DNA of 64,000 bases, taken from contig OZ365112.1 of the NCBI GenBank assembly GCA_977030845.1, positions 35,216,001 to 35,280,000 on the forward strand. The letters are read 5' to 3'. Origin of the DNA: Fimbriosthenelais zetlandica. Taxonomy: Eukaryota. Each line of letters starts with the position of its first letter. The first letter of the stretch is position 1. This document shows positions 5,370 to 56,280 of this stretch, one piece after another. The notes beneath the pieces were generated by a model. The model was given only the letters and a program-made list of their open reading frames with translations, made no database searches and was not told where the DNA came from. The position numbers and the translations under genes were made by a program.

Positions 5370-6110
5370 AGACATGAACACATATATTCATCCAAACCTT
5401 CAAAACACCATCCGCCAGCCGTTTGAAGTAGTGGGGCCAATAATGCTCAACATAATCTACATACCAATGGCGGCAGAGGATGCCGAATAGACAAGACAGA
5501 TTAATGTAAAATTAATTGTTATATCATTTTCCATCAAAGGAAACATGTGTAGAATATGCCACCTTTACCTATGGACAACTGGGCCTCCTACCTAAGGGCC
5601 AAAAGTTAGAGGATGCCAAGATGAAAACTCTGCCTAATGATAGGGGTTATGCATATCAAGGTGAGCATGCGTTTGCTAGTAACTTTTACTCCGCATCATT
5701 GAACTACAATGGTCAAGAATTCAACAATGCTGAGCAGGCGTATCATGCTACCCATGCACTCCACTGTAACAAGCATCACATACATACATCCATCAAGAAT
5801 AACAGCAATCCACGCAGTGTGAAAGATCTGTCTCGATTCCTCCCTAGGGATAAGGCATGAGATAACAAGAAAATTGACGTCATGAGAGAAATCGTATACT
5901 GCAAATTTGCACAGAATCCACAACTAAAAGATCGCCTTCTAGCCACTGGACATGGACAGCTGATTGAAGCTACACTTGACGAGTATTGGGACGCTGGGTC
6001 CCTACTCCACCATCGGAAACCACTAGACAACAAATGGACTGGATCCAACATACACGGTCAAATCCTTGTTGAAGTAAGGGAAGTCTTACGTGGTGGGCAA
6101 ACATACAAAG
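5370..6110 (+). pseudogene. NADAR (YbiA/DUF1768) domain pseudogene with a LINE-ORF1-like N-terminal region
   Basis: Motifs SNFY...F.NAEQAY, MREIVYCKFAQNPQLKDRLLATGHGQLIEATLDEYWDAG, W.GSNIHGQILVEVRE. In-frame TGA at 5858-5860 where Trp is expected; upstream part is frameshifted. Confidence 0.8.
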
Positions 6111-8905
6111 AGTACACTGAATCCCGCAAATCTCAACTAATTTTCAGGAAGAATGAGAATAACAGTGGAACTCCACGTGGCCATGTTGACAAACACTCGA
6201 ACCACACTGCAAGCCACACCCCTGTCTCCACCAATAGGGAAAGTTGGAACCCCGACCCAAAGCAAGCCTCCCCTTAGGCCGAAAGCAGGCCCAAAGAGGA
6301 CGTCTACTTCACCCACTGACCACCCGATCATGAATGACAATGTTGATAGTATCAGGCAAACCAGAAGTGTAACATACCGAGATAAAGTCTCATCCTCACA
6401 GCCCGTAATGGGTAATCCTAGTAGTATTGATTCCGCTGATGAGTATCTGTAATTCTGTGAATAGTGGACTCAACCCAGAGAACTATTATCAGTGTAAGTC
6501 TGTGATCACAAGCGAATGGAACTGTACACTAGATCAGACACGCTGGTTGGTATGAATAAATTAGACGCTGTTAGAATATTTCAGTTTGCATTGTTTAGTG
6601 ACATTTGTTATATATTTAGAAACATAGTTATTATTAGAAGACTTGTCTTGGGCTGTTCCTACTCCAATGAATGATAGCACTAAAATTGAATTTCTAGGGG
6701 TCATTCCATGCCAGTTCAACAAATGGCCCACGCACTTAGTCTAAGATTTTCTTGATTCTCACATCAATTGTTCCTAGATATGTTACTAGAACAAATCCAT
6801 AATCTGAGCTTCCTGCTGCAAATATTTTTTGAGATATTGCAATTTAAGCAGATAAGGGTCAGGACAAAAATGGCAAGAGATTTGCCAGGTTTCATTTGGA
6901 AGCCAACTTTGTGCATCAATAGCTCAGTGAGTTTTTGAGATAGCTCCTTTAAATTTTCTGTGCTTGTTTGTATACTATTTAACTCTAGGAATATCATTAT
7001 ATCTACTTCTAAATAGTCTACTAGAAAATAGAGCACCCAGTTTAAGTTTGACCAAAAATTGGATTTCTTTGAAAAATAGACATGTTTGAGCCCAAGAAAA
7101 TTGCATTTAAATTGAACTTTGTACCTACCAAGTACTAGGCTTCTGTGAAACAGATCTCCTGAGATATACTCAGTCAAAGTTGGATCATATGCAAAAACGA
7201 CCATTTTTCATTTCCCTTAAACCCAATGTGGGCAAACTAGAAGAACCTTGAAAATGCTTTTAAATGAAAGATGGAGATATATACTTTACTTGCTGATAGT
7301 TTTGAACACTCTTCCAAACCGCCTTCTTGGTGAAATAATCAATTAAATAAACATGACCGTCATGTAGAGTTAGAGTTGGACGGCCATATTTTCGGGCTCT
7401 TTTCGATTTTATTGTTAAAGGTCATTATGAAACTAGAGCTCTTAATGCCCCAATGTTCAAACTCCCTATCCCCAGGAATGCTAAAACTCAAAGGTCATTT
7501 ATCTACAATATGGTTACAACTTGCCAATATCTCTGCGCTCAATCGCAGATAGAAAGAAGTTTAAAGAAAGAATTAAATCACTACTAGCTCAAAGCAGATT
7601 CCCCGATTAGATTTAAAATGACATTATGTATAACTGTTTGCCTGTTTGACCTTTTTTCCTCCATCTCTGAATCTGTCATGAAAGCTGGATTAATTCAAAC
7701 AAGAAGACAATCTAATAATATGTATAAATATGTGTATGAACATCCTGCCATATGGTATGGATTTTGAAAAAGGTAATGAAAAATAATTGGTGTGTACTTT
7801 TGTGTTTTTTCTGTATATAATTATTGTGTTTAATGTTTTTGTGTGTGTGTGTGAATTTTAACTGTTTATTCTTTTTTTTTAAACCTCGGAGGTGATTTGT
7901 AACCCACGTGAGCAGGAAGGGGAGGGAAGACCGGGCATGCCCGACTCCTCTTGCTACAATATGAACAATGTGTTGTATGTGTTGTACCTCCTGTGAAAAT
8001 ATAGATTAAATAAAAAAAAAAAAAAAAATCATAAGGAAGGACAATAGATAGAAAGAAGTTGCTACCCTGTACACGCCCATTCACCCAACCAGCTGATCCA
8101 TGCTCCCTTCTTCACGGTTCCACAACAAGACTCCAGTCTGCTAACGCCTGCTATCCTGGCTTTTATTCCTAAAAAGACCATGGAACGCACCACTGCCCTT
8201 CATCAAGAGCTTGGAGACCTGAGCCTACCTTCATGGCATTCATGTGTTACCACTATACGGCCATGAGAGGGAACAACTATGACCACTGTTCAGCAGGAAG
8301 GCGCGAAACTGCCCGCCAGGAAGAGTGGGATCGATGGAACAAGGAATGCATTGCAGAAGAGACAAGGAGACGGCAGGGATATCTGTTACGAACCAGAGCA
8401 CAGGATGACCATGAGCAGGAATTCAGAGCGACGTACAAATGACTTTATGGGCTGAACCTACAAACAACCAGATGGCAGAGGAATACTGCTCCTGGGCTGG
8501 AACCAATTCAGCACATGTAGGAGCAGTCAGCCGTTCTTCGGCCAGATAGACCTGGCCTGTCACCTCCACTGGTCAATGTCAACTGACACTGTGCCCATGA
8601 CAATTACAATAACAGTGATCTGCAATCCACTGCAGATTTCAGATCTTCCCCTCTACAAACAGTTCCATTGATGAGTGGTGGCACCAACGCCACCAACACC
8701 ACTCAATGGGTATCTGAGCGTGCCAGACAACACTCCATGGTGGGGTGCGGTGGCAGACCCACTGCCATGCCATCACCCAGATTGCAAGGGCCCACGCTGC
8801 ACCTCTTGGCATCGAGCCCTCCACAACATGTATATCCCCCCACCTCCGCCATCCCCCCCACACCACCCCAGGTCTGTACAAAATAATTGACAAGTAAATG
8901 AAAGA

Positions 8906-9900
8906 ATGGCTCATCCTTTTTCTCTTATTACAGACATGATGGCCAACTTTTTACTCATCCTGCTACCATCATTCCTTTGGGCAGGAATCGAGGTGATTCC
9001 GCGCCTCCAGTATGGGACAATGTTCATTGACAAAGGATTGCGGAGTACCACTGAAACGAATAATTTTAACCTGGCCTTACATATCCCCATTCCGGAGATA
9101 GATCTCTCTTTAATGAGGGCGCCAGACTACTGTCCCTCTGCCCAGTGGAGGAAGTATCCTGATACATGCCGACGTCTCTGACCCCTAATTAAATCCTATG
9201 TCGCTGACCGCATTACCACCATACAAAACATTATCATAACTAGAAAGGACACACTCAGCCTTATCCCACCATGGCCAAAAGCCAGGGAGACCAGATTCAT
9301 AATTCAAGGAATTAAATATTTATTAGGAATAGCTGACCGGGATGAACAGAGCTGAATCTCCTCTAGACTGGAACAAGTAGAAGCAAATATTGACAGCAAC
9401 ATAAAACACACAGAAGAAAGATCAAGACAGCTGGAGGCTTCCTGAAGTCGACACTACCAAGCTTAAGGAACTACCAAGGCGGAATTGTAAATAATAGTAA
9501 AGCTCTAAAAGAAGTCTATTCTTCATGGAGGACAATGCAGTCCAACTTCACCAATATGAACAACGCTATTACCTTAGTTACGTCCATCATAGCATGAGCG
9601 CAGAAGGATCTGTTTCTACTCTCCAACATACATCAAACATATTTAAAGCTTCAGTCAGGAGTTACTCAGTTGATACAGGGTAAACTTTCCTCGGACCTGA
9701 TATCACCACAGACACTCCAGACGGGTGTGGAAAAGGCCCAAAATATCCTACAAAAGAACTTTCCTGGCTTCGGGATTCAATTTCCCCACATCTCTTACCT
9801 GTACTCTGGCATTGATTGTTATTGAGACAAAAACTTAACAATACCTGTGTGAACAAACCTGAAAACAGGAGAGATTGTGACAACTGCAAGTCGGGTATTG
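8906..9900 (+). pseudogene. Gypsy env (F-like class I fusion protein), disrupted
   Basis: Signal peptide (MMANFLLILLPSFLWA), RLQYGTMF motif, and RETR followed by FIIQGIKYLLGIADRDE (cleavage site plus fusion-peptide-like segment, from 9284). Stops and frameshifts present. Confidence 0.7.
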
Positions 9901-10138
9901 GTCGGGGGTGGGGAGAGAAAAGAACAGGGGGGGACAGGCAGGGGGGTTGAGGTGGGGATGGCGTGGTGGGGGGGGGGGGGGAAGGGGGTGAAGTCTTTAG
10001 TAGGGTATGTGTGGAGGGTTAATGTGGGCATGTAACACTCGGGTTGGGGGGGGGGGGGCGGGGGGGCAGGGGTGGCCAGCGATGGGACCAAGGAGGCTGG
10101 GACAGCCAAGACGCGTCACTTGCTATCAAGACACCAAC

Positions 10139-10345
10139 ATGGCCGCTTATCACATTCTCCTGATTATCCCCAGCGGAACCCTGCCTGTGGAGATGGGCCC
10201 CCTCGGGCCGTTGACCCTGGGGTTCACCCGGTCCGCGAACAACGAAATCGTGGTGACGGAACGGGCCAACGCTGGGCCCCTGACCGCCAGTGTTCGCATT
10301 CCAACGCCATCCTGCCCACCGCTAACGCAGACGGCTCATACGTAA
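10139..10345 (+). CDS. Small accessory ORF (68 aa) downstream of env
   Basis: MAAYHILLIIPSGTLPVEMGPLGPLTLGFTR...; homologs at 12979, 30354-30584 and 31666-31800. Confidence 0.55.
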   Translation: MAAYHILLIIPSGTLPVEMGPLGPLTLGFTRSANNEIVVTERANAGPLTASVRIPTPSCPPLTQTAHT

Positions 10346-10676
10346 GTAATACGCTTTTTGCTAATACCACTCATTACACTTGTACTTTGTGATAGGCTTG
10401 TGGGGGCATGAGCCGGCAAGCGCCGGGGCAGTGGGTCGTACGGCGAGCCCCCGGGGGCAGGGGGGCCATGAATGGATAGTTAGTCCGATATAGTATCATA
10501 TTGCATGTCTTATTCTATTGATAGAAGGTCGCTTTATGATTGGGGGAGAAAGAAAGAATGTCCCATAGTTGTACATTTCATGTGGACGGAAATGTCCCTA
10601 TTCATGACTGTAGGGGGAGTAGAAAAATCGACATGGACGCATGATAGAAAGGAGAAAAGAAAAGGTCCAAGTTTCT

Positions 10677-10910
10677 TGCTATCCCAAGGTATAGATTAAG
10701 TGTGGCATGTATGTATAATGGTTTTAATCGTATGCTAGATTGACCGTGCTATTTGCGGTTGACCACAGGATTATATGTTTTTATTGGTGGGGGAGGCCAA
10801 GGGAGAGCAGGCGGCTAATTGGCCTCTCACCCCAAGCCTCACGCTGAGCGCCACGCGTGTGTGCGTGTGAGTGGCTCGTGGCAAGGGCTGGGTGGAAGAA
10901 CGATGTGGTG
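10677..10910 (+). mobile_element. LTR-like repeat starting TGCTATCCCAAGGTATAGATTAAGTG (also at 13517, 30858, 41529)
   Basis: Same sequence at four positions. The 41529 copy begins exactly at TG in an unrelated context; a purine-rich tract lies shortly upstream in the other copies. Confidence 0.6.
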
Positions 10911-11743
10911 AGTAGTTTATGGTTCAGAAGAATCATTCGTGCTTGGTGTGCATACATAAGTCTTCCTAATATATTTTGCAACTAAGGTGGTCACATAAAT
11001 GACGGAAACCCCTATCCTATTTTTCAGGATAACCAGGTGAACGATGGGCTGGAGACATTAGACCATTATCTAAATCCCTAATGATTACGGGTGCCTTATC
11101 TTTGTAAATCAAGCTTGAATAAATTACGTCGGCAAGTCTTACTTGTGTTATATCTCAATGTGTAATACAGTTCCTCCTTGTCTTTAGACTACATCTGTAA
11201 GACACGCCCCCTTCTTCCGATGCTCATATATCACGTCTACCATGCTCCCCCACGCATCACTATATAATAAAGCCCTTAAGCCACGCTAGGACACTTACCC
11301 ATATACTCACTAGAAACTAGACGTAGTGTTGTGTGTTCTCGCTTACATTATATTCAGCATAGTTATATCTACATAATCATCCAGCATAACCAAGATATAA
11401 CACTTGTAAGTTATGGCGACTAAGGTGGTCATATAAATGATGGAAACCCCTTCTTTTTCAGGATAATCAGGTGAACGATGGGCTGGAGACGTTAGACCAT
11501 TATTTAAACCTTTAATGAGAAAAGGTGCCTCATCTGTGTAAATTATGCTGAATAACCTCAAACTTAAAGATCCTTGTTATGAAATGTTCCTACCTGAGTT
11601 TCCCCTTCTCCATGTGCACAAGCACAAAATAACTGTATTGTTTGCCGCCTACAACGAGGCTGGAATTCTTCAATTGTTCCTAGTTACTTCAATCAACACA
11701 CCACCCCAGGTCTGTACAAAATAATTGACAAGTAAATGAAAGA

Positions 11744-12740
11744 ATGGCTCATCCTTTTTCTCTTATTACAGACATGATGGCCAACTTTTTACTCATCCTG
11801 CTACCATCATTCCTTTGGGCAGGAATCGAGGTGATTCCGCGCCTCCAGTATGGGACAATGTTCATTGACAAAGGATTGCGGAGTACCACTGAAACGAATA
11901 ATTTTAACCTGGCCTTACATATCCCCATTCCGGAGATAGATCTCTCTTTAATGAGGGCGCCAGACTACTGTCCCTCTGCCCAGTGGAGGAAGTATCCTGA
12001 TACATGCCGACGTCTCTGACCCCTAATTAAATCCTATGTCGCTGACCGCATTACCACCATACAAAACATTATCATAACTAGAAAGGACACACTCAGCCTT
12101 ATCCCACCATGGCCAAAAGCCAGGGAGACCAGATTCATAATTCAAGGAATTAAATATTTATTAGGAATAGCTGACCGGGATGAACAGAGCTGAATCTCCT
12201 CTAGACTGGAACAAGTAGAAGCAAATATTGACAGCAACATAAAACACACAGAAGAAAGATCAAGACAGCTGGAGGCTTCCTGAAGTCGACACTACCAAGC
12301 TTAAGGAACTACCAAGGCGGAATTGTAAATAATAGTAAAGCTCTAAAAGAAGTCTATTCTTCATGGAGGACAATGCAGTCCAACTTCACCAATATGAACA
12401 ACGCTATTACCTTAGTTACGTCCATCATAGCATGAGCGCAGAAGGATCTGTTTCTACTCTCCAACATACATCAAACATATTTAAAGCTTCAGTCAGGAGT
12501 TACTCAGTTGATACAGGGTAAACTTTCCTCGGACCTGATATCACCACAGACACTCCAGACGGGTGTGGAAAAGGCCCAAAATATCCTACAAAAGAACTTT
12601 CCTGGCTTCGGGATTCAATTTCCCCACATCTCTTACCTGTACTCTGGCATTGATTGTTATTGAGACAAAAACTTAACAATACCTGTGTGAACAAACCTGA
12701 AAACAGGAGAGATTGTGACAACTGCAAGTCGGGTATTGGT
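11744..12740 (+). pseudogene. Duplicate of the env pseudogene at 8906
   Basis: Part of the tandem duplication; identical translated ORFs in the track. Confidence 0.7.
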
Positions 12741-14539
12741 CGGGGGTGGGGAGAGAAAAGAACAGGGGGGGACAGGCAGGGGGGTTGAGGTGGGGATGGC
12801 GTGGTGGGGGGGGGGGGGGGGGAAGGGGGTGAAGTCTTTAGTAGGGTATGTGTGGAGGGTTAATGTGGGCATGTAACACTCGGGTTGGGGGGGGGGGGCG
12901 GGGGGGCAGGGGTGGCCAGCGATGGGACCAAGGAGGCTGGGACAGCCAAGACGCGTCACTTGCTATCAAGACACCAACATGGCCGCTTATCACATTCTCC
13001 TGATTATCCCCAGCGGAACCCTGCCTGTGGAGATGGGCCCCCTCGGGCCGTTGACCCTGGGGTTCACCCGGTCCGCGAACAACGAAATTGTGGTGACGGA
13101 ACGGGCCAACGCTGGGCCCCTGACCGCCAGTGTTCGCATTCCAACGCCATCCTACCCACCGCTAACGCAGACGGCTCATACGTAAGTAATACGCTTTTTG
13201 CTAATACCACTCATTACACTTGTACTTTGTGATAGGCTTGTGGGGGCATGAGCCGGCAAGCGCCGGGGCAGTGGGTCGTACGGCGAGCCCCCGGGGGCAG
13301 GGGGGCCATGAATGGATAGTTAGTCCGATATAGTATCATATTGCATGTCTTATTCTATTGATAGAAGGTCGCTTTATGATTGGGGGAGAAAGAAAGAATG
13401 TCCCATAGTTGTACATTTCATGTGGACGGAAATGTCCCTATTCATGACTGTAGGGGGAGTAGAAAAATCGACATGGACGCATGATAGAAAGGAGAAAAGA
13501 AAAGGTCCAAGTTTCTTGCTATCCCAAGGTATAGATTAAGTGTGGCATGTATGTATAATGGTTTTAATCGTATGCTAGATTGACCGTGCTATTTGCGGTT
13601 GACCACAGGATTATATGTTTTTATCGGTGGGGGAGGCCAAGGGAGAGCAGGCGGCTAATTGGCCTCTCACCCCAAGCCTCACGCTGAGCGCCACGCGTGT
13701 GTGCGTGTGAGTGGCTCGTGGCAAGGGCTGGGTGGAAGAACGATGTGGTGAGTAGTTTATGGTTCAGAAGAATCATTCGTGCTTGGTGTGCATACATAAG
13801 TCTTCCTAATATATTTTGCAACTAAGGTGGTCACATAAATGACGGAAACCCCTATCCTATTTTTCAGGATAACCAGGTGAACGATGGGCTGGAGACATTA
13901 GACCATTATCTAAATCCCTAATGATTACGGGTGCCTTATCTTTGTAAATCAAGCTTGAATAAATTACGTCGGCAAGTCTTACTTGTGTTATATCTCAATC
14001 TGTAATACAGTTCCTCCTTGTCTTTAGACTACATCTGTAAGACACGCCCCCTTCTTCCGATGCTCATATATCACGTCTACCATGCTCCCCCACGCGTCAC
14101 TATATAATAAAGCCCTTAAGCCACGCTAGGACACTTACCCATATACTCACTAGAAACTAGACATAGTGTTGTGTGTTCTCGCTTACATTATATTCAGCAT
14201 AGTTATATCTACATAATCATCCAGCATAACCAAGATATAACACTTGTAAGTTATGGCGACTAAGGTGGTCATATAAATGATGGAAACCCCTTCTTTTTCA
14301 GGATAATCAGGTGAACGATGGGCTGGAGACGTTAGACCATTATTTAAACCTTTAATGAGAAAAGGTGCCTCATCTGTGTAAATTATGCTGAATAACCTCA
14401 AACTTAAAGATCCTTGTTATGAAATGTTCCTACCTGAGTTTCCCCTTCTCCATGTGCACAAGCACAAAATAACTGTATTGTTTGCCGCCTACAACGAGGC
14501 TGGAATTCTTCAATTGTTCCTAGTTACTTCAATCAACAG

Positions 14540-16754: not shown

Positions 16755-17010
16755 TCCATATAGAATGCCATTAATGAAACGCCATAAAGTAGAGGAATGA
16801 ATGAATGAATGGTGATTTAACGCCATGCCAAGGCTTAAAGTAGAGGAATTAGTACAACAAATGTTAGATGATGGGATCATTAGGCCTAGTTTATTCTCCT
16901 GGGCGTCCCCTATAACCTTGGTTCCAAAGAAAGATGGGAGCACAAGGTTTTGTGTAGACAACCGTAAACTCAATGTTGTGACCCTAAGAGACACATGTAG
17001 GCCTATGTAG
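16755..17010 (+). mobile_element. Gypsy reverse transcriptase N-terminal fragment
   Basis: After removing a 37-bp insert and one TSD copy it reads PYRMPLMKRHKVEELVQQMLDDGIIRPS...WASPITLVPKKDGSTRFCVD.RKLN. Confidence 0.9.
16799..16835 (-). mobile_element. 5'-truncated (ATTC)n-tailed retroposon, 37 bp
   Basis: GAATGAATGAATGGTGATTTAACGCCATGCCAAGGCT flanked by a perfect 14-bp TSD TAAAGTAGAGGAAT (16785-16798 and 16836-16849). Confidence 0.85.
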
Positions 17011-17649
17011 GTGAAATTTAGGCCTATTGCAAAACTAGTGTTATAGAATGTATCCAGTGAGGGCAGCACTAGCTGCCCACAGGAACTTCCAAAGTAAGCA
17101 TCCGAAAATAAAATCAGTAGACCCCTAGAAGCCATCCGAGTTAGTCTACTCATTACACCTACTCCAGCACCCTTGTACCACCACTGGGCAGCCCCTTTCT
17201 ATATTCTATCTCACTAGTCAGAAATAGGTGGACAGTCCTATCTTTCCGTCCCGAGTATTCCTTTTTTCAAGAACCCTAGGCAGTGTAAGACTGTCGACCA
17301 TGGCATCCACTCGCATCCTTCTAGCTGTGGAAATTCCACTGAAACACATGCCAATATCCTTGAATTTTACATATTATGGCCCAACAACCGTGGTAGAGAT
17401 CAAGAGACCCTCTTGGTCCCAGAGAGCCTTCAAAAATTGGAATATCAAAGTCAATTAATTGTCTGTCCTGTTGTATGACCATACAAGGAGGCAGAAAAAG
17501 GGTAAGTAATATTCTTCATTGTGTCTTTTTTTTTGTTTTTTTTTTGCTCTGTACTGTCATGTGGAGAGGTCAGGAAAGTGATATGATAGCACTAGTTATT
17601 ATATTCATAAGCTACCCTTTTAAACAAATGTGTTAAAATTGAGTATAGA

Positions 17650-18230
17650 TACTGGAGATCATAAGCCTATCCAAAGTAGACACTACCATGTCCCTTTAGC
17701 AAAACGGGAAATCATAGATAAACAGGTCTCTGAAATGTTAGATGCGGGTGTGATAAAGTCATCTTACAGTCCATGGTGATTGCCTGAAGTACTAGTAAAA
17801 AAGAAAGGGGGAGAGTTCAGATTTTGTGTTGATTTCAGGAAATTAAATAACATCACAGCAAAATATAATTGGCCCTTGCTTGTAATCGATGACATTCCCT
17901 TACTTGGATAATGTGATCATCTCCAGTAAGAGTCCTGAGGAGCACCTGGAGCACCTACAATTGGTTTTTGATAGGTTTAGAAAGTCTAACTTGAAATTAA
18001 AGAGATCAAAGTGGGAGTTCTTCAGGGAGGAATTGAAATATTTGGGACATGTTCTAACTAGAAGGAGAATACTACCTGACCCTGACAAGATAAAAGTGAT
18101 TCAGGAATCGTCACATACAAATAATGTAAGGGACATAAGGGGATATATTGGGATGACCTCTTTTTATAGAAAGTTCATCGAGGGCTATTGCTCTGCCTTA
18201 ACTAGGTTAACGAAAAAACCTGGTCAGGCT
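17650..18230 (+). mobile_element. Gypsy reverse transcriptase fragment (internally deleted)
   Basis: KKKGGEFRFCVDFRKLN; YLDNVII (decayed YLDD); LKYLGHV; IRGYIGMTSFYRKFI. Confidence 0.9.
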
Positions 18231-18959
18231 TGTCCACACTAGTATTTTTCATCACTTTTCCTCAAAAACATGTCACCATCTATGCATGGTATTTTATAAT
18301 TCAATTTACATGGTTCTTTTATGGGAAGGGTGCAGCTGCCACCTCTCCTCGGCATGAAACGCGAGCCAGTAATGCCTCCTTGGCTCCACCAGCCCCTCAG
18401 GCAGGAGGACAGGACCCCCCCCACATGAAAGAACTGAGAGGTCCTCTGGCTCCACAACTGTGCTAGGGAACTCGCCCTATGTGAGGGATTCATCAGAGAC
18501 CTCCAAGATGGGGACCTTCAGAAGTACCGAACAAAGTTAATGGGCAGGACGACGGTGGCCAGGGACTGGAACCACAGCAATGCCACTAACGCCACAGACC
18601 TGATCTTGGATCAGGCTGAGGTGCTTCGCCCGTCATAGTCATAGGGGATGACACATAGACGGACAAGGAGACGGCCCCTCAATCAAGCAAGAGCCAATGG
18701 CCAGCCCTGCATCTCCCCCACGCCCCACCCAGAAGTGAAGGACGTCATACAGGCATAACCAATTCTACTTCAGAAAAAAAAATGAGAAAATGAATCTAAT
18801 AAAGGCAGACATATAATGCCAAAAAAAAAAAAAACTGAAATAAAAAATCAGACGGGCGGCCACAACTGTTCCGTCCCCCGCCCCACCCACACCTCACCAC
18901 CAACTTCCCCCAACCCCTCTTCACCTACTTCACAGGGGTACCAACACACCCGCACACAT

Positions 18960-41528: not shown

Positions 41529-41826
41529 TGCTATCCCAAGGTATAGATTAAGTGCTGCATGTATGTAGAAGGGTTTAATTGTATGCTAGATTCACCATGC
41601 TACTTGTGGTTGACCACAGGATTATACGTTTATCGGTGGAGAATGGCAAGGGAGAGGAGGTGGCTAATTGGCCTCTCACCCCAAGCCTCATGATGAGTGC
41701 CATGCATGTTTGCGTGTGAGTGGTTTGTGGCAGGGGCTGGGCGGAGGGTGGGTGTTAGTGTAGATTATACAGCCTCCGTCTATAGGAGAAGGTAATCATT
41801 ATAAGTGGTGCTATTTGGCCGGTACT
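41529..41826 (+). mobile_element. LTR fragment of the TGCTATCCC family
   Basis: Aligns closely with 30858-31153. Confidence 0.7.
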
Positions 41827-46414: not shown

Positions 46415-46902
46415 GTGGGGCGTATTGGTATGCGATCCGTCATTCTCATGACCTTAGCTGAAGAGTTAAACACGGCCCCCAATATAATTGCAACAAAATC
46501 TAAAACTAAGAGTAAAACACACTTTTCAGTATATACCTTGAAAGATCTCATTTATAAAAGCTCTAAAGCTAAACTTTTTATTGAAATACACGAAAAAAAT
46601 TGAGAGTGCATTTATTGTAACCTTCCGCTAAGGTACCACTGCATAGACGAGTGGCAGATCCATGGGCTTCCAGGACCCCCTGTTGTGGATCCATAATCCA
46701 CGCACCGTGCTTTTGGAAGCTAGTCTCCCGGTCATATATGTACTGGGAGACGTGTCCAAAATGCAATAACGAATTCCAAGAAAACGGGCGGGTCCTGCGA
46801 CAAGACGCTGGCCCTTTGTTGCTTGCCCTTCGGTATCTATCGATACGCCGTGACAATGGCATGCCTTTAGATGTAGACATTCCTCTTCCACCTAGAATGT
46901 AA
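46415..46902 (+). pseudogene. RING-finger-like ORF with one stop and one frameshift
   Basis: In-frame after TGA 46601-46603: ECIYC; shifted frame: TPCCGSIIHAPC...CPKC, giving a RING-like ligand set. Confidence 0.6.
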
Positions 46903-48133
46903 AATCAACCGAGACCCACTTGGAATGCCGATATTTTATGAAATTAATTCGGGGGTAAAAAAAAGAATATTGTATTTAAAAGAAATATCGGCTAATTAGA
47001 TGACATTTTAAAGACGCGGGGAGAGATAATATTGCCCTCCAAGTGAACATTGTTGACTTTACATTCTCATCTTATAAAATACACGCCACTTCTTTTCCCG
47101 TGTGCTTACTAACACCCCATAACGGCCAGACTCCCTGTTGCCTATCAAAATTTAATAATAAAGTCAGCCCATTTACCACCCCATGTCCAGCATGTCGACC
47201 AAAACGGAAGACAAGACTGGAAAGACGGGTCTTGCTTGAAACAGGAATCCCGTTTCGACCCGTCCCGTGTGGGGGGGTGGACATCGGCCCTTGTTTTAAA
47301 TTATATTTGCGACTGGGAGTCTTTTTCTCCACCAAAAAGGTTATTTGCTTCTTGTGTCAATCTTCCTAAAAACAGGAGAGTGTACCCCTCTCGATAGGGA
47401 GATTGGCACATACTTTAACCCCCCTCGGGGTCGCCTGCATCAAGCCTTCAGAGCAGTGATAATTCCCGAGGGGGGGTAAGAATTCCACTGAAAATATGAC
47501 ATGGCTTTATTTGCCTCAAAAGGGCCTTCTGTCATCATTTTTAAAATTCTACTGGATTGTGATAAGAAAAAAATAAAAAAACGACTAACCTAAAATTTAT
47601 TTGCCTCTAGTTATTATTTTCTCATATACCGCATATGAAAATTATTTCATCTATAATTAAAAACCTACTGCAGCTATACTTATGGAATGACCGAACATCG
47701 ACGGAATGGAATTAAAATTATAGTATGTTAATCTCTTCCACATATCTGTGAGGTGTACAGTTCAGTTCTATAGATCGGTGAGGGGTGTGATTTCAATTCA
47801 TAATAGTTTCTATTTGTGGGGGACAGAAAAGATGGGGCAACGATACCAAGCCACTTGGCGTGATATCTGCATCATGAAGATAGACGAAGAGTTCCCCATT
47901 GTCATGTGTGGGGGTAGTATGTTCCTCAAAATAAAAAATGAAATTGTGGCATGTGAAAACCTATGCCTCATCTATATGGTTATCATTGTAATAATTAACA
48001 GTTTTAAATTATGTTTAAGTTATCTGATGTTTATTGTGAATTATCTATAGGAATAGTCTAATCCATTTATTATTTCTGTATTATTTCTGTATCTCCCTTC
48101 TAAATCATCCCTTCAGAGATCTTTGGGGAAAAA

Positions 48134-48901
48134 CACTCATTTGCGATCAGGGTTCAAACAACAGGTCCTGCATGAAAACGATGTTTGGCGAGGGCCACCT
48201 GATGCACAAAAACGAAAAGGTCTTTCTGTTCTACGATCCCCCACATCTCTTGAAGAGTGTCAGAAATAATTTTATGAAGTATAGCTTTCAGCTTCATGGT
48301 GAGAATATCAGCTGGGAGTTTGTTGAAAAGTTTTATTATATTGACAAACAAAATCCTATTTAAATGGCTCCAAAACTTAATCACAACCATATTAATATAC
48401 CACCATTTGGTAAAATGAAAGTTAACCTTGCAGCCCAAGTGCTCAAAGCTATGATTCTGGTGAAACACGCTAATGTGCACCCAGTAACAAGAACATCCCA
48501 GCATTATGCACTCTCCGATGAATTTCACAAGTGGAATACGAAAGATCCAAAAGACCAATTCCGTGATGTGCAACTTGTGCCAGAACTTAGGGGAACAACA
48601 AACACGCAAGTATGTGAGCAGTTGTTTAGTGTTCTGGACCGAGACACCTATTTTCTTGATAGGATGTCTCCAAAAAACATATGGTCGTTCTCCGGTTAAT
48701 ACTCCACATGAAAAACTGTAAGAAACAGGAAATCCAGAGACCTAATGCAGAGCAAACTGAGAAAAGGGTGGCATCTAAAGGAAACATGTCTGATAGAGAT
48801 AGCTGTACTTCTGAGGAAGTTCTGGTTGTTTTACCTGAATTGGTAATATATTGTTCAGGGTACCCGGTACAGTGATACCCCTTGCAGGGCCAATTATTTG
48901 G
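48134..48901 (+). mobile_element. Second copy of the P/KDZ chimeric segment
   Basis: Aligns with 26625-27849 minus the LTR/PBS insert; same P-to-KDZ junction (AAQVLK then AMILVKH). Confidence 0.85.
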
Positions 48902-48919
48902 AGTTGTGGGAGGCCGAAT

Positions 48920-49075
48920 GGGAAGATCGCCTCTGGGAAGATCGCACCAACACCCGAACGAGTGGTGCACTTGTCAGAAATGTGCAGAAATGCCCACGGC
49001 AGGGCAATGTCTTTGTTGTCGTGAGATCAAAGCTTTAAATGCAAAATTTGGAGATACCATGTTTGACGGTGAGTA
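48920..49075 (+). pseudogene. Cys-rich fragment resembling the P2X7 intracellular domain
   Basis: WCTCQKCAEMPTAGQCLCCRE matches the remembered WC.C..C..MPT..E/QC.CC.E pattern. Confidence 0.65.
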
Positions 49076-49337
49076 TTTTAGCATTATGTACTCTCCGACG
49101 AATTTCACAAGTGGAATACGAAAGATCCAAAAGACCAACTCCATGATGTGCAACTTGTGCCAGAACTTAGGGGAACAACAAACACGCAAGTATGTGAGCA
49201 GTTGTTTAGTGTTCTGGACCGAGACACCTATTTTCTTGATAGGATGTCTCCAAATAAACATATGGTCGTTCTCCGGTTAATACTCCACCTGAAAAAATCC
49301 TGAATTATTTGAAGCCCTAAAATTAAAGTCGAAATCT

Positions 49338-50460
49338 ATGTCAAAAAATGACAAACTTTGTGCGCTTATTTTTGATGAAATGTCCATTAAGGAATTTGTA
49401 CAATATAATCAGGGATTGGATACTATTGAGGCATTTGTAGATCTTGGAGAGTTGGGACAGGAGAGATTCATAGCCAACCATGCCCTGGGATTCATGATCA
49501 GGGGACTGAATTCAAAATGGAAGCAACCAATTGGATATGTTTTGACATCTGGTCCTATAAACCATTAAAAACTGAATCCAGTATTGCAACACTGTTTGCA
49601 CAAAATTGAGGAAGTGGGGTTTATAGTAAAGGCATTGATTTGTGATCAAGGGTCCAACAATAGGGCATGTGTTCAGTCTCTTTTTAATGATGGTGTCATG
49701 AAATTCAAAAATGAAAGTGTTTTCCTTTTCTATGATCCCCCTCACTTGCTCAAGAGTATCCGAAACAATCTAATGAAGAGTGATTTAGTTGTGAATGGTG
49801 AAAATGTGTGCTGGGGTTATGTTAAACATTTCTTTCATCTGGATCACTCACAACCTGTAAGGATGGCACCAAAACTGAGTGAAAAACACATCAATCTTCC
49901 CCCCCTTTGCAAAAATGAAAGTGACTTTGGCAGCACAAGTCCTGAGTCATACATTAGCTGCAGGAATATCAATTCTTGTCAGGACTAATGATTTGCCTCC
50001 TGAAGCTATTCATACGGCCCCTTTTATTGAAAGAATGGATCAACTTTTTAATTCATTCAACAGCAGAACCCTCAAGAGTAAGCAGAAATTGGGAAATGCC
50101 TTTTCAGATATCTCTGGTCATACCAATTTTCTTTCTGATTGTATCCCTTTATTTCAAAATATGACACTGGCAGACGGGAAAAAGGTTCCATGTATTGAAG
50201 GGTGGGTAGTCACCATAAAATCATTACTTCGTTTGTGGGAGAACCTTAGGGATGAGTATGGATTCAAGTTTCTCGTGACTAATAGATTAAACCAAGATTG
50301 TATTGAAAATTTGTTTTCTGTGATAATGGGGAAAGGGGGGCATCGAGATAATCCAACACCACAACAATTTCGGGCTGCATTCAGAGTTGTAGTTGTAGAG
50401 AAACTCCTAATACAAAGTAAGGGGAGTAATTGTCAGGAAGATCAAACTTTTATTTGCCCT
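49338..50460 (+). mobile_element. P-element transposase catalytic core, two frameshifts
   Basis: FDEMSIK (D), ICDQGSNN (D), LNQDCIENLFS (E); GTP-binding insertion region MAPKLSEKHINLPPFAKMKVTLAAQVLSH. Confidence 0.93.
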
Positions 50461-51876
50461 TAGCAATACCTCCTCCAGTTGTGCCCTTAAGCATGAATTG
50501 TACTGTATAAAATAGAACTGTTATAAATCACTGTTTTGCAACAGTGATTTATAACCACGCTAGGCCTACTGTAGGATTACATAGCATAGCGGTATTGGCA
50601 TGTCTCATATAATCATCAGATGATTAGAACTACCGGTACCGGTATGTTTTAAAGTAAATATTGATGGGGAAACCCAATTTTTTTTTACTAGGCCTGCATG
50701 TAGGCTCAACATGTTTATGATGTTAACAAAAAACTCGTACAGAAAAGGCAGCATTGCGGTTATGGTATGCCAGTATTATTTTGCTATTAGGCCTATATAG
50801 GGAAATTGAGACACAATATATACTGATGTTATGACTAATCCTATCGAACCCTTGCTATATTTTAGGTATTGTCTTATTGATCAAAGATTTATCTATAAAT
50901 TTGTCAATAAAATGTGTCAATAAAATTTAAAATCTTTCACACTTTTGCAACAATTCGACTTTTGAAAGTTCTTGGCTTCAGAATTACTATCTTTGTGTGT
51001 GAGGAGGGCAGTTAGGCCTACATTTGTTTAAGCGTGTGTTGAGTTAGGTAGGCCTACTTTAGTTCAAACTTTATCCATCCATGGCACTACCGAAGGCCCC
51101 AGGGCCCAATGCGTGATTTATGTATTGGAAAAGAAGGATCCAAATGTATAGTTAGTGGAGACCAACAGACATACTCAATCATGAAAAATCTCATAAATAA
51201 ATACCCTGATATTTATCATGGATTATTCCCATGCCAGGAGATTGGCACTTGTTAAAACTTGCCGCAGAAACAACAAGAGAACGATATGGGACGGAGGGTT
51301 ACATGACCTTGGCAAAATATGTGGTCACCACAAAGAAATTAATCAGTGGAGACACATCAACAATATACTAATAGGCCTTCACATAGCTCTTCTAATGGAT
51401 CTTCTAACCATTGTTCCGGCGGCAGATCTATCCCTGCCAGTGCTGGCTCCCTCCCTTTTGGAAGAGGTGTTGGGGCGGGGGGGCTTATGTGAGTACTTGG
51501 GAGTTCTTGAACGACCCCTTAATGACCACATGATGGGCGGGGGGTTCGGGGGGGGGGGGGGAGCCCCTGCTGCAGCTAGGGCAGCAGTCAGCCTTCCCCG
51601 AGGGATTTGACGCGGTGGGCCAGCTGGACAAGCACCAGAGTGTGTGTGTGACTGCAGGAGCGTGAGTAGGAGCGTGAGTAGGAGCGTGAGTAGGGAGTAG
51701 GGAGGCAGCATGGAGTGCCGCCCCTTGATGTACATGTATATGTAATTTAAGTAGTAGAACCCAGAGCTGTGTTGAGTTCATATCGACTCCTCTCCTCCTC
51801 ACCCCTAACGGCAGGGATAAGATCCCCAGTATAACATATTGGTGGAGAACCTAGGCATCCTAGTAAACGTCTAAAT

Positions 51877-53748
51877 TTGGGGATCTTTATAATATTGGAT
51901 ATTCCGTGTGGGTGCACTCTTGAACTGGGGGCCGCGACCTTACATGCCCAGGGGTGTCCCTGTGACTCACAGGGTGATAATTATGTCATAAATGTCCATA
52001 CTGGCTTCAACCTGCCACTGGCTATGGCGTTTCATTTATCAATACCGGAGTATCATGGGGCAACCATGCATGATGCTTTGATCCACCTACACATCCCTAC
52101 AGTCCAGCAAATTCACAAGACCATCCAGTTATTACCCCCTGATTTAATAAGGAACGGCTTAAACATAAAAACTGTAGCTGAACACGTCCAAAAAACGGAT
52201 AGTAGTGAGTTAACAGCATGGGATAATTTGCATGTAAAACCCATTGGTACGAACTCGTCGCATACCCTTGGCGTTGTGGCTTTGATTTTGTCGATGATAA
52301 CATTAGCGTTTGCCCTTTATTTGTTTTACAGGGTGCATGTCCTGACGAGTGTGCTTTTGATGGCCCGTACAAGTTTTTCGTATGATATTAAAAACCTCAA
52401 CCTTACCCCCATCAATATACCATGGACTGTTGGGCCTGTTGTGCAGCCCTCACTATCGACAGAAACCCCTTTCAAAACCCTCCATAGAACCACTCTTGAT
52501 TGGGTTCCATTTATTATCATGGTGGCGGTGGCTGGAGCAATACTGTGGTGCTGCTGGAAGAAGCTAAGGGGCATTGGCCGTTGGTGCCAGTGTGGTTCTG
52601 TAGAAGACATCGACGCCTCATGGATTGTTCTGAAGTTGCAGAGGCGGCGACAAGTCGTTACAATTCGACTTCTGCAATTGGCTTACGAAATACATGCTAT
52701 GGAAGTGCCACCTGCACCGGGCCTCGAGTCCATAGGGCTCACCTTTGGGTGGTGCAGGTGCATGTGCAGGCCAGTATTACATCTCGGCTGGCGAGGAGAT
52801 CTGGCCATACGAGTATATGGTGTATTTCATTTGTCAGTACCGGAATATCATGGAGCAACCATGCATGCCGCTTTAATCCACTTGCACATCCCTACCGTCC
52901 AACAGATACATAAAACCATTCAGATGTTACCCCCAGATTTGATAAGGAATGGATTAGACATCAAGACAATAGCAGAACACGTACGGAAAACAGATAGTAG
53001 TGAAATGACAGCGTGGGAAGATTTGCATGTTAAACCCATTGGAACTAACTCATCACATACCCTTGGCGTTGTGTCTTTGATTTTGACATTAATAACCTTA
53101 GTTTTTGCCCTATATTTGTTTTACAGGGTGCATGGCCTTACAAGTGTCCTCTTAATGGCACGTACCAGTTTTTCATATGACATTAGACACCTAAACCTGA
53201 CCCCCATCAATGTACCGTGGACTGTTGGGCCTGTTGTGCAGCCCTCAACGGAGACTCCATTTAAAAACCTGCATAAAACCACCCTTGATTGGGTTCCGTT
53301 TGTCATTACGGTGGCGGTGGCTGGCACGGTACTATGGTCTTGCTGGAAAAGAACGAGAGGCATTGGCCGTTGGTGCCGGTGCGAGGCATCATTGTCCTCT
53401 GTGGAGGACAATGATGCCTCGTGGATCGTCCTCAAGTTACAAAGAAGGCGACTGGTTGTTACCATTAGACTGATGCAGTTGGCATATGAGGTCCATGCGA
53501 TGGAGGTGCCCGTCCTGCATCTCTGCTGGCAAGGGGATCTCGCCATATGAGTGTATGGTGTCCAACGACGAATCTCGCTCCCGTCGAGGGTTGTGGTTCC
53601 TTTTGCCAAGGTCAGCAAGTTGACAAAGGCCTGTGGGGACGGCCAGACCGTCTTGGTCCTGACGGTGGTGCCACCTCAAGGGGGACATCACCAGCTGGCC
53701 TGGGCATCCCCTTATACTGGACAGATTCCATTCACGGAATTCCAGTGA
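51877..53748 (+). mobile_element. Env C-terminal half as two diverged in-frame copies
   Basis: 557-aa track ORF with an internal repeat; continues in frame past TGA 53548-53550 (CGA in the first copy) to 53748. Confidence 0.85.
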
Positions 53749-54030
53749 GTTATCATTTCCGTTTTGATAATGATTGGCGGTGCCTAAAGGTTGATATACC
53801 TTTCCAGGGTAAGTAATGCTGGTGTATATTATGGTTTAGGCATCAAGACAAGGGACAGGGTCTATTGATTGAAAATAGTGTACCGTATTTCCATTGTTAT
53901 ATTTAACAGTTATATTATGTATATATGCATTGCTTTCTGCATATATATGTTCTATTTATTTCTTATGATTTCCCTTCTTAGACTCGATGATGTGGTCGTT
54001 GACCCCCCTCATCCTCGAGCCTCCCATGGT

Positions 54031-54700: not shown

Positions 54701-54904
54701 ATATATATATATGTATATATACCGGAACCTCTGGTCAGATTATATTTATGTTACAAAATTAACAAACCAAAAAAAAATAATAAAACCAGAAAACGGGAAC
54801 TCCTATGTTTAATAAACACTTTAGGCCATTTGCAAAATTCATGACAAACCCGAGGTTTTGTCATCATAAAGAAAGGGGGAGTAATGTTATTAATGTAATA
54901 CTGC

Positions 54905-55160
54905 TTGCTCATTCCACACAGCAACAGCTATTGTGAAACTGCTGTCAGCATAGTCAAGAAAATTCAGACTGATGTGAGGAGTCAGCTTGGAAAACAGAAG
55001 GGAGGTCACTCAAACACTAGTGTGTATACTGTCCACCAAGGAGATGTAAGAAACAAACTGTGTGGTTTGCTGGTTGCAAAAATGTCTTTGTAAAAAAAGC
55101 ATGTCAATGATGTCACACATACAAACCAAGCCTATCAGTGTTAACCAAAGCAAAAAAAAC
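54905..55160 (+). mobile_element. hAT-type transposase C-terminal (dimerisation-like) fragment
   Basis: LIPHSNSYCETAVSIVKKIQTDVRSQL resembles the L.LPHSNA.CER.FS.V....TD.RS.L motif. Confidence 0.6.
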
Positions 55161-55389
55161 GCAACTTATGGTCCTTCGTGAGGCAGAGCTCATTTTCTGA
55201 ATAATGTCAAGTCAAGTACTGTACAAGAACCAGTTTGAGTTTCTAAGAACTTGTTAACTTGTCCTTACTGGTCGGCCGTTCTTGGGGGCGGGGGGGGGGG
55301 GGGGGGTAGGTGGGAGGTGGGAGGTAGTTTTTTAATATAACTACCAACACTGGCTACAAATAAGTTCAATAAACCAGTCACAGAAGACC

Positions 55390-56280
55390 TATAGATACTG
55401 AAAGACTAGAACAAGAAAATGTCGACTCTAAGGCCAATTCTCAGTCAATGTTGAGACTGAATCTAGCCTTACTCGCCAAACATGCTGAGACGCTTGAGAA
55501 ACATGCCTTATTCATGGCGAGAACTAATTCACATTGAACCATTAATAAGACTGAACCATTAAGATCAAACCAATAAGGTAGACCTTTTTGAAACTTCTGT
55601 CCATGAATAAATACATGAATGAATGAATGAATGAATGAATGAATGAATGAATGAATGGTGATTTAACTCCATGCCAAAGCCTTATTCATGGCAAGAACTA
55701 ATTCCCATTGAACCATTAAGACTGAACAATTTAGATCAAACCAATAAGGTAGACATTTTTGAAACTTCTGTCCCAAGACAGAAAGAATGAATGAATAAAT
55801 GAATGAATGAATGAATGAATGAATGAACGAATGGTGATTTAACGCCATGCCAAAGCCTTATTGAATGAACGAATGAATGAATGGTGATTTAACGCCATGC
55901 CAAAGCCTTATTCATGGCGAGAACTAATTCCCATTGAAAAATTAAGGCTGAACCATTGACATCAAACCAATAAGGTAGACCTTTTTGAAACTTCTGTCCC
56001 AAGAATGGGGTGACAGTTGCTGTAGACACAGCTCTTCCAATCACAGGAGACTTAAAGACACTAAAAGACTTTGTTCTTTGTTGGCAATAATATATTGACT
56101 CCAACTCCAATTCTCGATACATCTCCAACATACAAAAACTGGCGATCACTTTGTGAGATTCTCCTCACAAGAACTATCCTTTTTAACAAAAGAAGACAGG
56201 GAGAAGTTGAAAACCTTCGAGTGCAAGCCTCCCGAGAACAGGCAAATTAGCAAGAAAGACAGAACAAGGAAATTGAGTCG
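55390..56280 (+). mobile_element. Tyrosine-recombinase-like gene fragment interrupted by a retroposon array
   Basis: LPITGDLKTLKDFV and SLCEILLTRTILFNKRRQGEV (R..E motif of the first catalytic Arg). Confidence 0.55.
55506..56003 (-). repeat. Tandem array of (ATTC)n-tailed retroposon 3' ends, ~3 units plus a fragment
   Basis: (GAAT)n GGTGATTTAAC(G/T)CCATGCCAAAGCCTTATT begins at ~55617, ~55800 and ~55863. Confidence 0.85.

What the first reader, a model, noticed from the sequence alone, without database searches (positions are those of the whole stretch)
5370..56280. Extreme one-strand bias of transposon fragments: candidate uni-strand (flamenco-like) piRNA cluster enriched in env-bearing Gypsy elements
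Seen: about 30 recognisable coding fragments read on the + strand (NADAR, gag at 14.5/19/21.4/40.8/42.6 kb, three RTs, integrases, at least seven env pieces, several P transposases, four KDZ pieces, hAT, tyrosine recombinase, RING). Only the 4540-4855 fragment reads on -, plus some non-coding LTR pieces and later retroposon tails. All are short, dead and densely packed. Known: these superfamilies share no targeting mechanism, and Drosophila flamenco is a uni-strand cluster whose fragments, largely env-bearing gypsy-family elements, lie antisense to one long transcript. Inference: selection has kept fragments antisense to a right-to-left transcript, forming a silencing library against potentially infectious retroelements in a non-insect animal.
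Basis: partly seen in the sequence, partly recalled or inferred. Interest (0 to 1): 0.85.

Follow-up and report, generated by a model that had tools for sequence, protein, structure and literature searches.

The report
One-strand graveyard of broken transposons
A 50-kb stretch holds the broken remains of at least eleven separately inserted mobile elements, mostly envelope-carrying Gypsy retroelements, all pointing the same way; this pattern marks flamenco-type small-RNA defence loci in insects, but sequence alone cannot show that this one works that way.

Summary
The strand bias is real. In Pfam scans of the 150 longest stop-free pieces per strand, 13 + pieces hit transposon or NADAR families and no - piece hit any family. 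Profiles and relatives of the env-like protein, gag, pol and P transposase, run against both strands, hit 33 + pieces and none on -. Every internal repeat pair in the block is direct.

The roughly 30 fragments are not 30 events. Some are recent local duplications. Codon-position patterns show that the diverged copies come from separate element lineages, so I count at least 8-9 Gypsy-type and 3-4 P-like insertions (p about 0.001 for 11 sharing one orientation).

The env-like pieces belong to a family that sits as the third ORF of Gypsy-type elements elsewhere, and some relatives match Pfam Baculo_F. All gene copies are broken.

Not confirmed: gag at 14.5, 40.8 and 42.6 kb, KDZ, hAT and tyrosine recombinase. 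The organism was not identified.

The published sequence-only criteria for flamenco-like loci are met, except that DNA transposons here share the bias. No transcript or small-RNA evidence can be had with these tools. A minus-strand transcription unit that filters insertions by orientation is the best explanation, probably a piRNA source. Neutral duplication history is a live rival.

The parts
5370..56280 (+). Block of co-oriented, broken transposon remnants (coding sense on +). Homology-supported spans cover 52% of it.
5516..6274 (+). NADAR-domain ORF. The whole domain is present, with one in-frame stop. Not shown to be part of a transposon.
   Evidence: Pfam PF08719, E=1.8e-16 and 5.5e-5; break count
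8859..14538 (+). Two tandem copies (99.6% identical) of a 2.84-kb unit: env-like fragment, conserved post-env ORF, LTR-like segment.
16816..18239 (+). Gypsy-type reverse-transcriptase remnant 'a', with a local duplication of its N-terminal part.
   Evidence: Pfam RVT_1 6.6e-11
17213..17502 (.). Unidentified repeat. Its only other copy (4564-4839) is inverted and lies outside the block.
18978..20717 (+). Gypsy-type gag (zinc knuckle)-protease-RT remnant 'b'. At least 4 frame changes and an internal deletion of part of pol.
   Evidence: Pfam RVP and RVT_1
21030..21320 (+). env-like N-terminal fragment.
   Evidence: env profile E=3.4e-7
21387..21928 (+). gag fragment (at least 1 frame change).
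   Evidence: gag of L006/L001, E=1.4e-11
26351..28017 (+).
   Evidence: Pfam TNP-like_RNaseH_N 4.3e-15
28016..28291 (+). Second, diverged P-like fragment P2 (49% protein identity to P1).
28252..28844 (+). env-like middle fragment.
30083..31210 (+). Post-env ORF plus an LTR copy (94% identical to 41529-41826).
31241..31833 (+). env-like N-terminal fragment followed by another copy of the post-env ORF.
32345..32785 (+). env-like C-terminal tail, 85% identical to 53432-53812, with a neutral divergence pattern.
33124..34817 (+). P-like transposase remnant P3 (GTP-binding insertion to C-terminus). At least 3 frame changes and one interruption.
35390..36919 (+). Gypsy-type integrase remnant (at least 4 frame changes).
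   Evidence: Pfam Integrase_H2C2 7.6e-12, rve 8.3e-9
37037..40335 (+). Most complete env-like copy (profile positions about 4-703 of 791). At least 2 frame changes, at least 1 in-frame stop, and one interruption of about 1 kb that holds a separate integrase C-terminal fragment (37713-37997).
41529..41881 (+). LTR copy, direct with the copies at 10.5, 13.3 and 30.9 kb.
46621..46899 (+). RING/PHD-like zinc-finger piece (weak support).
   Evidence: PDB 8jwj PHF7, E=0.0047; no Pfam hit
48117..49300 (+). Duplicate of the P1/KDZ-like composite (96-98% identical, same internal junction) plus one more copy of the KDZ-like piece.
49293..50487 (+). P-like transposase remnant P5 (RNase H N-terminal domain, GTP-binding insertion, RNase H C-terminal domain, in order). 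One frame change, one in-frame stop, both ends missing.
   Evidence: Pfam 2.8e-26, 7e-10, 5.5e-10; PDB 6p5a P transposase 1.2e-16
51835..53813 (+). Two head-to-tail copies of the env-like C-terminal half in one 571-codon open frame, then the tail after one in-frame stop.
54899..55090 (+). Unverified.
   Evidence: no Pfam hit and no PDB hit
4564..4839 (-). Inverted copy (87%) of the unidentified repeat at 17213-17502. It marks the left edge of the co-oriented block.
60842..60912 (-). tRNA-Gly(GCC) gene between the block and the tubulin gene.
61877..61948 (-). tRNA-Met(CAT) gene.
63506..63967 (+). Start of an alpha-tubulin gene: TATA box, exon 1 ending in the ATG, a 129-bp intron, exon 2. A host gene to the right of the block.
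   Evidence: Pfam Tubulin 2.6e-17

Best explanation
The block records many separate insertions: at least 8-9 env-carrying Ty3/gypsy elements of several lineages, 3-4 P-like DNA transposons, and a few others. All have since been broken by stops, frameshifts, deletions and local direct duplications. Only copies whose coding sense is on the + strand are detectable.

The most likely cause is that the block is, or long was, one transcription unit read right to left on the - strand, starting somewhere between about 55 and 63.4 kb. Insertions antisense to that transcript were kept. Sense insertions were lost, either because they are useless as a source of antisense small RNAs or because they would cut the transcript short. 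In function this would be a uni-strand, flamenco-like piRNA source locus.

Shown: the strand bias, the independence of the insertions, the env-carrying Gypsy identity, and the decay.
Inferred: the transcript, its direction, small-RNA production and selection.
For: The strand bias was confirmed by unbiased and both-strand searches.

The diverged copies differ at 54-65% of third codon positions against 13-33% of second positions. They therefore diverged as working elements and entered separately. Eleven same-way events give p=0.001.

Two unrelated superfamilies share the orientation: LTR retroelements and P-like cut-and-paste elements (Pfam; PDB 6p5a).

Relatives of the env-like pieces sit as the third ORF after gag and Gypsy-type pol in four loci. 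One of these has identical LTRs. Four of 19 relatives match Pfam Baculo_F, best E=4.1e-10.

FlaHMM-style bins show Gypsy on one strand only in 9 of 10 bins (criteria from PMC11400887 and PMC10643416).

The single inverted copy lies at what would be the 3' end of the proposed transcript, where sense insertions are tolerated in flam-like loci (PMC10643416).
Against: There are no expression or small-RNA data. AATAAA is not depleted on the - strand (37 seen, 24 expected). No promoter was identified.

The block is about 51 kb, against 227-1085 kb for the flam-syntenic clusters in Drosophila (PMC10643416). In those loci the bias is carried by Gypsy only, whereas here P-like elements share it.

About 48% of the block is unannotated, so undetected minus-sense elements are possible. 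Rampant direct duplication in the region shows that a neutral process preserving orientation is at work. The species is unknown, so there is no genome background.
Confidence: 0.45

Rival explanations
1. The block lies inside a long - strand transcription unit that is not a piRNA precursor, such as a large intron or a long non-coding RNA. Sense-oriented insertions were purged because they bring polyadenylation and splice signals. This is the well-known antisense bias of intronic transposons, in an extreme form.
For: The filter would act on every transposon class, which fits the shared orientation of Gypsy-type and P-like remnants. It needs nothing beyond a transcript.
Against: No - strand coding piece in the window matches any Pfam family. 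The right flank holds two tRNA genes and the start of a + strand tubulin gene with a 129-bp intron, which suggests compact genes rather than 50-kb introns. AATAAA is not depleted on the - strand. From my own knowledge, intronic antisense bias is usually about 60-80%, not complete.
Confidence: 0.2
2. Neutral history. A few founding insertions happened to share an orientation. The rest of the pattern was made by processes that keep orientation: direct local and segmental duplication, unequal exchange between LTRs, and recombination of new cDNA with resident copies.
For: Direct duplications are frequent and of several ages: 99.6% (2.84-kb tandem), 96-98% (P/KDZ-like composite with a shared junction 21 kb apart), and 85% (env tail, neutral pattern). 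Two anchor pairs share an offset of 21.04-21.06 kb. Most remnants belong to one element group, for which homology-driven entry is conceivable.
Against: The diverged env, RT, post-env ORF and P pairs show strong third-position excess, so they are not in-place duplicates. The same gene segment occurs in 3-4 lineages. Four P-like copies of different lineages also share the orientation (0.5^4 relative to the Gypsy set). No inverted pair occurs in 51 kb, although inversions between copies are not forbidden.
Confidence: 0.2
3. Orientation-specific targeting. The elements insert next to a local feature, or into each other, in a fixed orientation.
For: Some Ty3/gypsy relatives are known to target pol III genes (my own knowledge), and two tRNA genes lie at 60.8 and 61.9 kb.
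Against: The block lies 4.5 to 55 kb downstream of the tRNA genes, not at them. LTR elements and P-like elements use unrelated integration machinery. The fragments sit at many different positions in each other.
Confidence: 0.05
4. Annotation artefact. Minus-sense elements are present but invisible because they lack Pfam models or relatives in the searched collections.
For: 48% of the block is unannotated. Pfam failed on several + pieces too, and two of the three word-indexed protein searches found nothing.
Against: Both strands were treated alike. Stop-free pieces of 100 aa or more are fewer and shorter on - (38 against 54), and most - pieces of 95 aa or more overlap + coding remnants. No - piece is repeated in the window except as the mirror of a + pair.
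Confidence: 0.05

Closest known systems
Drosophila flamenco and flam-like uni-strand piRNA clusters (PMC10643416; FlaHMM, PMC11400887)
   Same: Dense, broken transposon fragments. Gypsy-family, env-carrying elements dominate. Nearly all lie on one strand over consecutive 5-10-kb bins. Local duplications occur. The one opposite-sense copy sits at one end.
   Different: Here the block is about 51 kb, against 227-1085 kb for the flam-syntenic clusters. P-like DNA transposons share the bias, whereas in Drosophila the bias is driven by Gypsy only. The genome is CpG-depleted and the species unknown. Promoter, transcript, small RNAs and somatic gonadal expression are untested.
Somatic ovarian piRNA sources against env-carrying gypsy in mosquitoes, bees and crickets (PMC13172572)
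   Same: The same class of target element, and the same idea of a heritable library of antisense fragments.
   Different: Those loci were defined by small-RNA data, and all are in insects. Nothing comparable is available for this window.
Env-carrying Ty3/gypsy elements ('errantiviruses') across metazoans (PMC13524379)
   Same: gag-pol-env order inside LTRs in the relatives. The relatives give an F-type signal, Pfam Baculo_F. Relatives were recovered from marine metagenome scaffolds and large eukaryotic contigs.
   Different: That study catalogues intact copies. The window holds only broken remnants of several lineages. The window's own env piece does not reach Baculo_F directly, and its fold search is ambiguous.
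Antisense bias of transposons inside introns of host genes (my own knowledge)
   Same: An orientation filter imposed by a transcript, acting on all element classes.
   Different: The bias there is partial, and flanking exons are present. None were detected here.
Mollusc piRNA clusters enriched in Gypsy and DNA transposons (PMC6128900)
   Same: A non-insect precedent for clusters enriched both in Gypsy and in DNA transposons.
   Different: Strand bias of the inserted elements was not reported in the passages I read. Those clusters are enriched in young copies, whereas here the copies are decayed.

Membership tests
flamenco-like uni-strand piRNA cluster | Transposon-fragment-dense locus of tens to hundreds of kb | tested here: met
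   52% of 50.9 kb is covered by homology-supported remnants, all broken. The block is smaller than the Drosophila examples.
flamenco-like uni-strand piRNA cluster | Strong strand bias of Gypsy-family fragments across consecutive bins | tested here: met
   9 of 10 5-kb bins have coverage of 0.12-0.91 on + and none detected on -. 33 pieces against 0.
flamenco-like uni-strand piRNA cluster | Enrichment of env-carrying Gypsy relative to the genome | tested here: inconclusive
   There are 8-9 Gypsy-type insertions with env-like pieces at 7 loci. No genome background is available.
flamenco-like uni-strand piRNA cluster | Bias carried by Gypsy and not by other element classes (PMC10643416) | tested here: not met
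   Four P-like transposase remnants share the orientation.
flamenco-like uni-strand piRNA cluster | Discrete promoter at one end and a long Pol II transcript antisense to the fragments | not testable with these tools
   No expression data. No CpG island or recognisable promoter in 55-63.4 kb.
flamenco-like uni-strand piRNA cluster | 24-32-nt, 1U-biased small RNAs from one strand, loaded in PIWI proteins | not testable with these tools
   No small-RNA data are reachable, and the species is unknown.
env-carrying Ty3/gypsy ('errantivirus'-type) element | Gypsy-type pol (PR-RT-RH-IN order, H2C2 plus rve integrase) | tested here: met
   Pfam RVP, RVT_1, Integrase_H2C2 and rve on + pieces. Collinear matches to pol of L001 and L003-L006.
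env-carrying Ty3/gypsy ('errantivirus'-type) element | env-like ORF downstream of pol, inside the LTRs | tested here: met
   In the window the integrase remnant is followed by the env-like copy (35.4-40.3 kb). Relatives sit as the third ORF in L001, L003, L005 and L006. L001 has LTRs.
env-carrying Ty3/gypsy ('errantivirus'-type) element | env is a viral fusion glycoprotein of F type or gB type | tested here: inconclusive
   4 of 19 relatives match Baculo_F, best 4.1e-10, but the window piece itself has no Pfam hit. The model has pLDDT 65.6. Foldseek top hits are chu-like virus glycoproteins (6.8e-7), with baculovirus F at 0.013 and TM-scores of 0.34 or less.
P element / THAP9-type transposase | RNase H-like catalytic domain split by a GTP-binding insertion domain | tested here: met
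   Pfam TNP-like_RNaseH_N, GBD and RNaseH_C in order in 49293-50487. PDB 6p5a, E=1.2e-16.
intron of a minus-strand host gene | Minus-strand exons on both sides of the block | tested here: inconclusive
   No - strand piece in the window matches a Pfam family. Exons could lie outside the window or be non-coding.

The most novel reading that the evidence does not exclude
An animal outside the insects, with a methylated (CpG-depleted) genome, keeps a flamenco-type uni-strand small-RNA source. The locus archives antisense fragments of several lineages of F-type env-carrying Gypsy elements, and of DNA transposons as well. It preferentially retains the env and 3' parts, which every transcript of such an element would contain. 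That would extend the gypsy-versus-piRNA arms race, so far shown only in insects (PMC13172572), to the wider range of animals that carry such elements (PMC13524379).
Probability: 0.3. Interest if true: 0.8.

Novelty: new member of a known kind. Interest (0 to 1): 0.6.

Why it matters
[quoted passage not shown] Whether hosts outside insects counter them with a dedicated uni-strand piRNA source is stated as an open question (PMC13524379, Discussion). A locus picked from sequence alone that meets the published strand-bias criteria gives a concrete place to look with small-RNA and stranded RNA data. If the bias proves to be neutral or intronic, the locus would instead caution against calling flamenco-like clusters from transposon orientation alone outside Drosophila.

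Tried and rejected
Searches that found nothing or were ambiguous:
- Word-indexed protein searches with the 571-codon env frame and with the integrase piece. So no species identification and no close relatives.
- The P-like piece found only unnamed ENA/Logan fragments at 64% identity or less.
- PDB sequence searches with two env pieces, three gag-like pieces and the hAT-like piece found nothing significant.
- Pfam gave no support for gag at 14.5/40.8/42.6 kb, KDZ, hAT or tyrosine recombinase.
- gag of L001 did not match the window by tblastn at E<=1e-3. By phmmer it matched only the gag fragment at 21.4-21.9 kb, as did gag of L006. The gag-like pieces at 14.5, 40.8 and 42.6 kb matched none of the five gag proteins.
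- The structure model of the env piece is of middling confidence, and its fold matches do not decide between F type and gB type.

Ideas rejected:
- The block as one or two LTR-bounded nested elements. The 94%-identical LTR copies at 30.9 and 41.5 kb do not bracket a gag-pol-env interior.
- A deep collinear 21-kb duplication. Only two short anchor pairs share the offset, and the DNA between them is unrelated.
- Depletion of polyadenylation signals on the minus strand as a sign of a minus-strand transcript. None was seen.
- Poly-A runs as markers of retroposon orientation. Too few to say.
- Rfam found only the two tRNA genes.

Full report
**Setting.** The window has no N. Its G+C is about 42% and CpG observed/expected is about 0.4-0.6 throughout, so it comes from a eukaryote with a methylated genome. 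At the right end an alpha-tubulin gene starts on the + strand. It has a TATA box near 63506, an exon 1 ending in the ATG, a 129-bp intron and then exon 2. Two tRNA genes lie on the - strand at 60842-60912 and 61877-61948. The left 5 kb holds minisatellites. I could not identify the species.

- On +, 13 pieces inside the block hit RVT_1, RVP, rve, Integrase_H2C2/zf-H2C2, the three TNP-like domains of P/THAP9 transposases, or NADAR. One more + piece is the tubulin exon, outside the block.
- On -, none of the 150 pieces hit any family. Fisher p=1.9e-4.
- Self-comparison of the window gave 43 direct against 2 inverted DNA repeat pairs.
- At protein level every homologous pair inside 5370-56280 is direct. 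The only inverted partner of anything in the block is 4564-4839, just left of it. The other inverted pair lies at 58-60 kb.
- Searches run on both strands hit 33 distinct + pieces and none on -. These used a profile of env relatives, gag and pol of five related elements and P-transposase relatives; the count is.
- The supported spans cover 52% of the block.

**What the pieces are.** A 224-aa stop-free piece of the best env-like copy found 18 proteins among 1.84 billion representatives. Most are 700-830 aa long, and the best E-value is 3e-22.
- Where context could be read, the relative is the third ORF after gag and a Gypsy-type pol with PR-RT-RH-IN order. This holds in L001, L003, L005 and L006. 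L001 has 373-bp LTRs that are 100% identical.
- Four of 19 relatives match Pfam Baculo_F (best 4.1e-10), over the part that aligns with the window piece. Baculo_F is the baculovirus F protein, to which the F-type envelope of gypsy-type errantiviruses has long been likened (PMC13524379).
- The window piece itself has no Pfam hit.
- Its model has pLDDT 65.6. The fold matches are viral surface glycoproteins with low TM-scores: chu-like virus glycoproteins at 6.8e-7 and baculovirus F at 0.013. 'Envelope-like' is therefore supported, but the type is not settled.
- The P-like copies carry the RNase H-like domain split by the GTP-binding insertion. One matches the solved Drosophila P transposase 6p5a at 1.2e-16.
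- Not confirmed: gag at 14.5, 40.8 and 42.6 kb, KDZ, hAT and tyrosine recombinase. RING support is weak.

**How many independent events?** Some pieces are recent local copies.
- A 2.84-kb unit is repeated in tandem at 99.6% identity.
- A composite of a P fragment and a KDZ-like fragment, with the same internal junction, recurs 21 kb away at 96-98% identity and with no codon-position bias.
- The older, diverged pairs differ at 54-65% of third codon positions but only 13-33% of second positions. These pairs are env N, middle and C parts, RT, integrase C-terminus, the post-env ORF, and P copies. That is the signature of divergence under purifying selection.
- These copies therefore belong to different element lineages and entered the block separately. 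Neutral decay to 40-60% protein identity would also not leave open frames of 100-570 codons.
- Merging every collinear neighbour leaves at least 8-9 Gypsy-type and 3-4 P-like insertions, all in one orientation. For 11 events this gives p=0.001.

**State of the genes.** Every copy examined is broken.
- The gag-PR-RT remnant and the integrase remnant each have at least 4 frame changes.
- The most complete env-like copy has at least 2 frame changes, at least 1 in-frame stop and one interruption of about 1 kb.
- P5 has one frame change and one stop and lacks both ends.
- P3 has at least 3 frame changes and one interruption.
- The NADAR ORF has a single stop.
- The exception is a 571-codon open frame at 51.8-53.5 kb that holds two head-to-tail env C-terminal halves.

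**Explanation.** Unrelated integration machineries have no shared reason to insert in one orientation, so a filter acting after insertion is the simplest account.
- The known filter of this strength is a long transcript. In flamenco-like loci, antisense insertions feed antisense piRNAs, and sense insertions are rare near the promoter (PMC10643416).
- Applying the FlaHMM emission rule (Gypsy on one strand only per 5-kb bin; PMC11400887) gives that state in 9 of 10 bins from 5 to 55 kb.
- The proposed transcript would run right to left from somewhere between 55 and 63.4 kb.
- Against this reading: no depletion of AATAAA on the - strand, no recognisable promoter, a modest size, and DNA transposons sharing the bias.
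- The last point fits a general transcript-based filter, whether a piRNA precursor or a plain intron or non-coding RNA, as well as it fits a gypsy-specific defence.
- Orientation-preserving duplication is demonstrably active in the region. It remains a serious neutral rival for part of the pattern.

**Comparison and novelty.** Env-carrying Ty3/gypsy elements outside insects are already described (PMC13524379). Uni-strand gypsy-directed piRNA sources are described in Drosophila and other insects (PMC10643416, PMC13172572). Mollusc clusters enriched in Gypsy and DNA transposons are known (PMC6128900). If this locus is a piRNA source it is a new member of a known kind, in an unverified and probably non-dipteran host. 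The sequence evidence makes it a good candidate, no more.

Noticed in passing
51835-53813 (+): One 571-codon open frame holds two head-to-tail copies of the env-like C-terminal half. They are 86% identical in protein but differ at 42% of third codon positions against 7-9% of first and second. Either two related lineages were joined, or the frame has been kept open in place.
   Followed up: partly
inside 8859-14538, 30083-31210 and 31241-31833 (+): A conserved ORF between env and the 3' LTR, with no Pfam family, diverged under purifying selection (third positions 0.63-0.65 against second 0.23-0.27). It may be a fourth gene or an env tail of this element group.
   Followed up: partly
26620-27849 vs 48129-48901, and 32345-32785 vs 53432-53812: Two pairs of direct copies share an offset of 21.04-21.06 kb but differ in age (96-98% against 85% identity), with unrelated DNA between them. 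This could be an old 21-kb duplication overwritten by later insertions, or a coincidence.
   Followed up: partly
8859-14538: A 2.84-kb unit is repeated in tandem at 99.6% identity. It is either very recent or an assembly effect.
   Followed up: no
60842-60912 (-) and 61877-61948 (-): tRNA-Gly(GCC) and tRNA-Met(CAT) genes lie between the block and the tubulin gene. They could act as a chromatin boundary.
   Followed up: no
63506-63967 (+): Start of an alpha-tubulin gene with TATA and CCAAT boxes, an exon 1 that ends in the ATG, and a 129-bp first intron. There is no CpG island.
   Followed up: partly
5516-6274 (+): An ORF with a complete NADAR domain and a single in-frame stop lies at the left edge of the block. 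Whether it is a host pseudogene or transposon cargo was not determined.
   Followed up: no
861-1571 and 3430-3865: Minisatellites of 19-bp units (37 copies) and 81-bp units (5.4 copies) lie left of the block.
   Followed up: no
58065-58349 and 60149-60433: An inverted repeat pair (78% identical) lies 1.8 kb apart, outside the block and next to tRNA-Gly. It may be the ends of a DNA transposon.
   Followed up: no
9900-10700, 12700-13500, 30100-30800, 40900-41600: The only CpG-rich, G+C-rich stretches of the window lie in the post-env and LTR-like parts of the Gypsy-type remnants.
   Followed up: no
whole block: env-like pieces (7 loci, about 60% of the Gypsy coding bases I could detect) outnumber gag and pol pieces. 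The expected share is about 30% from the ORF lengths in L001. Search sensitivity differs between genes, so this is only suggestive.
   Followed up: partly
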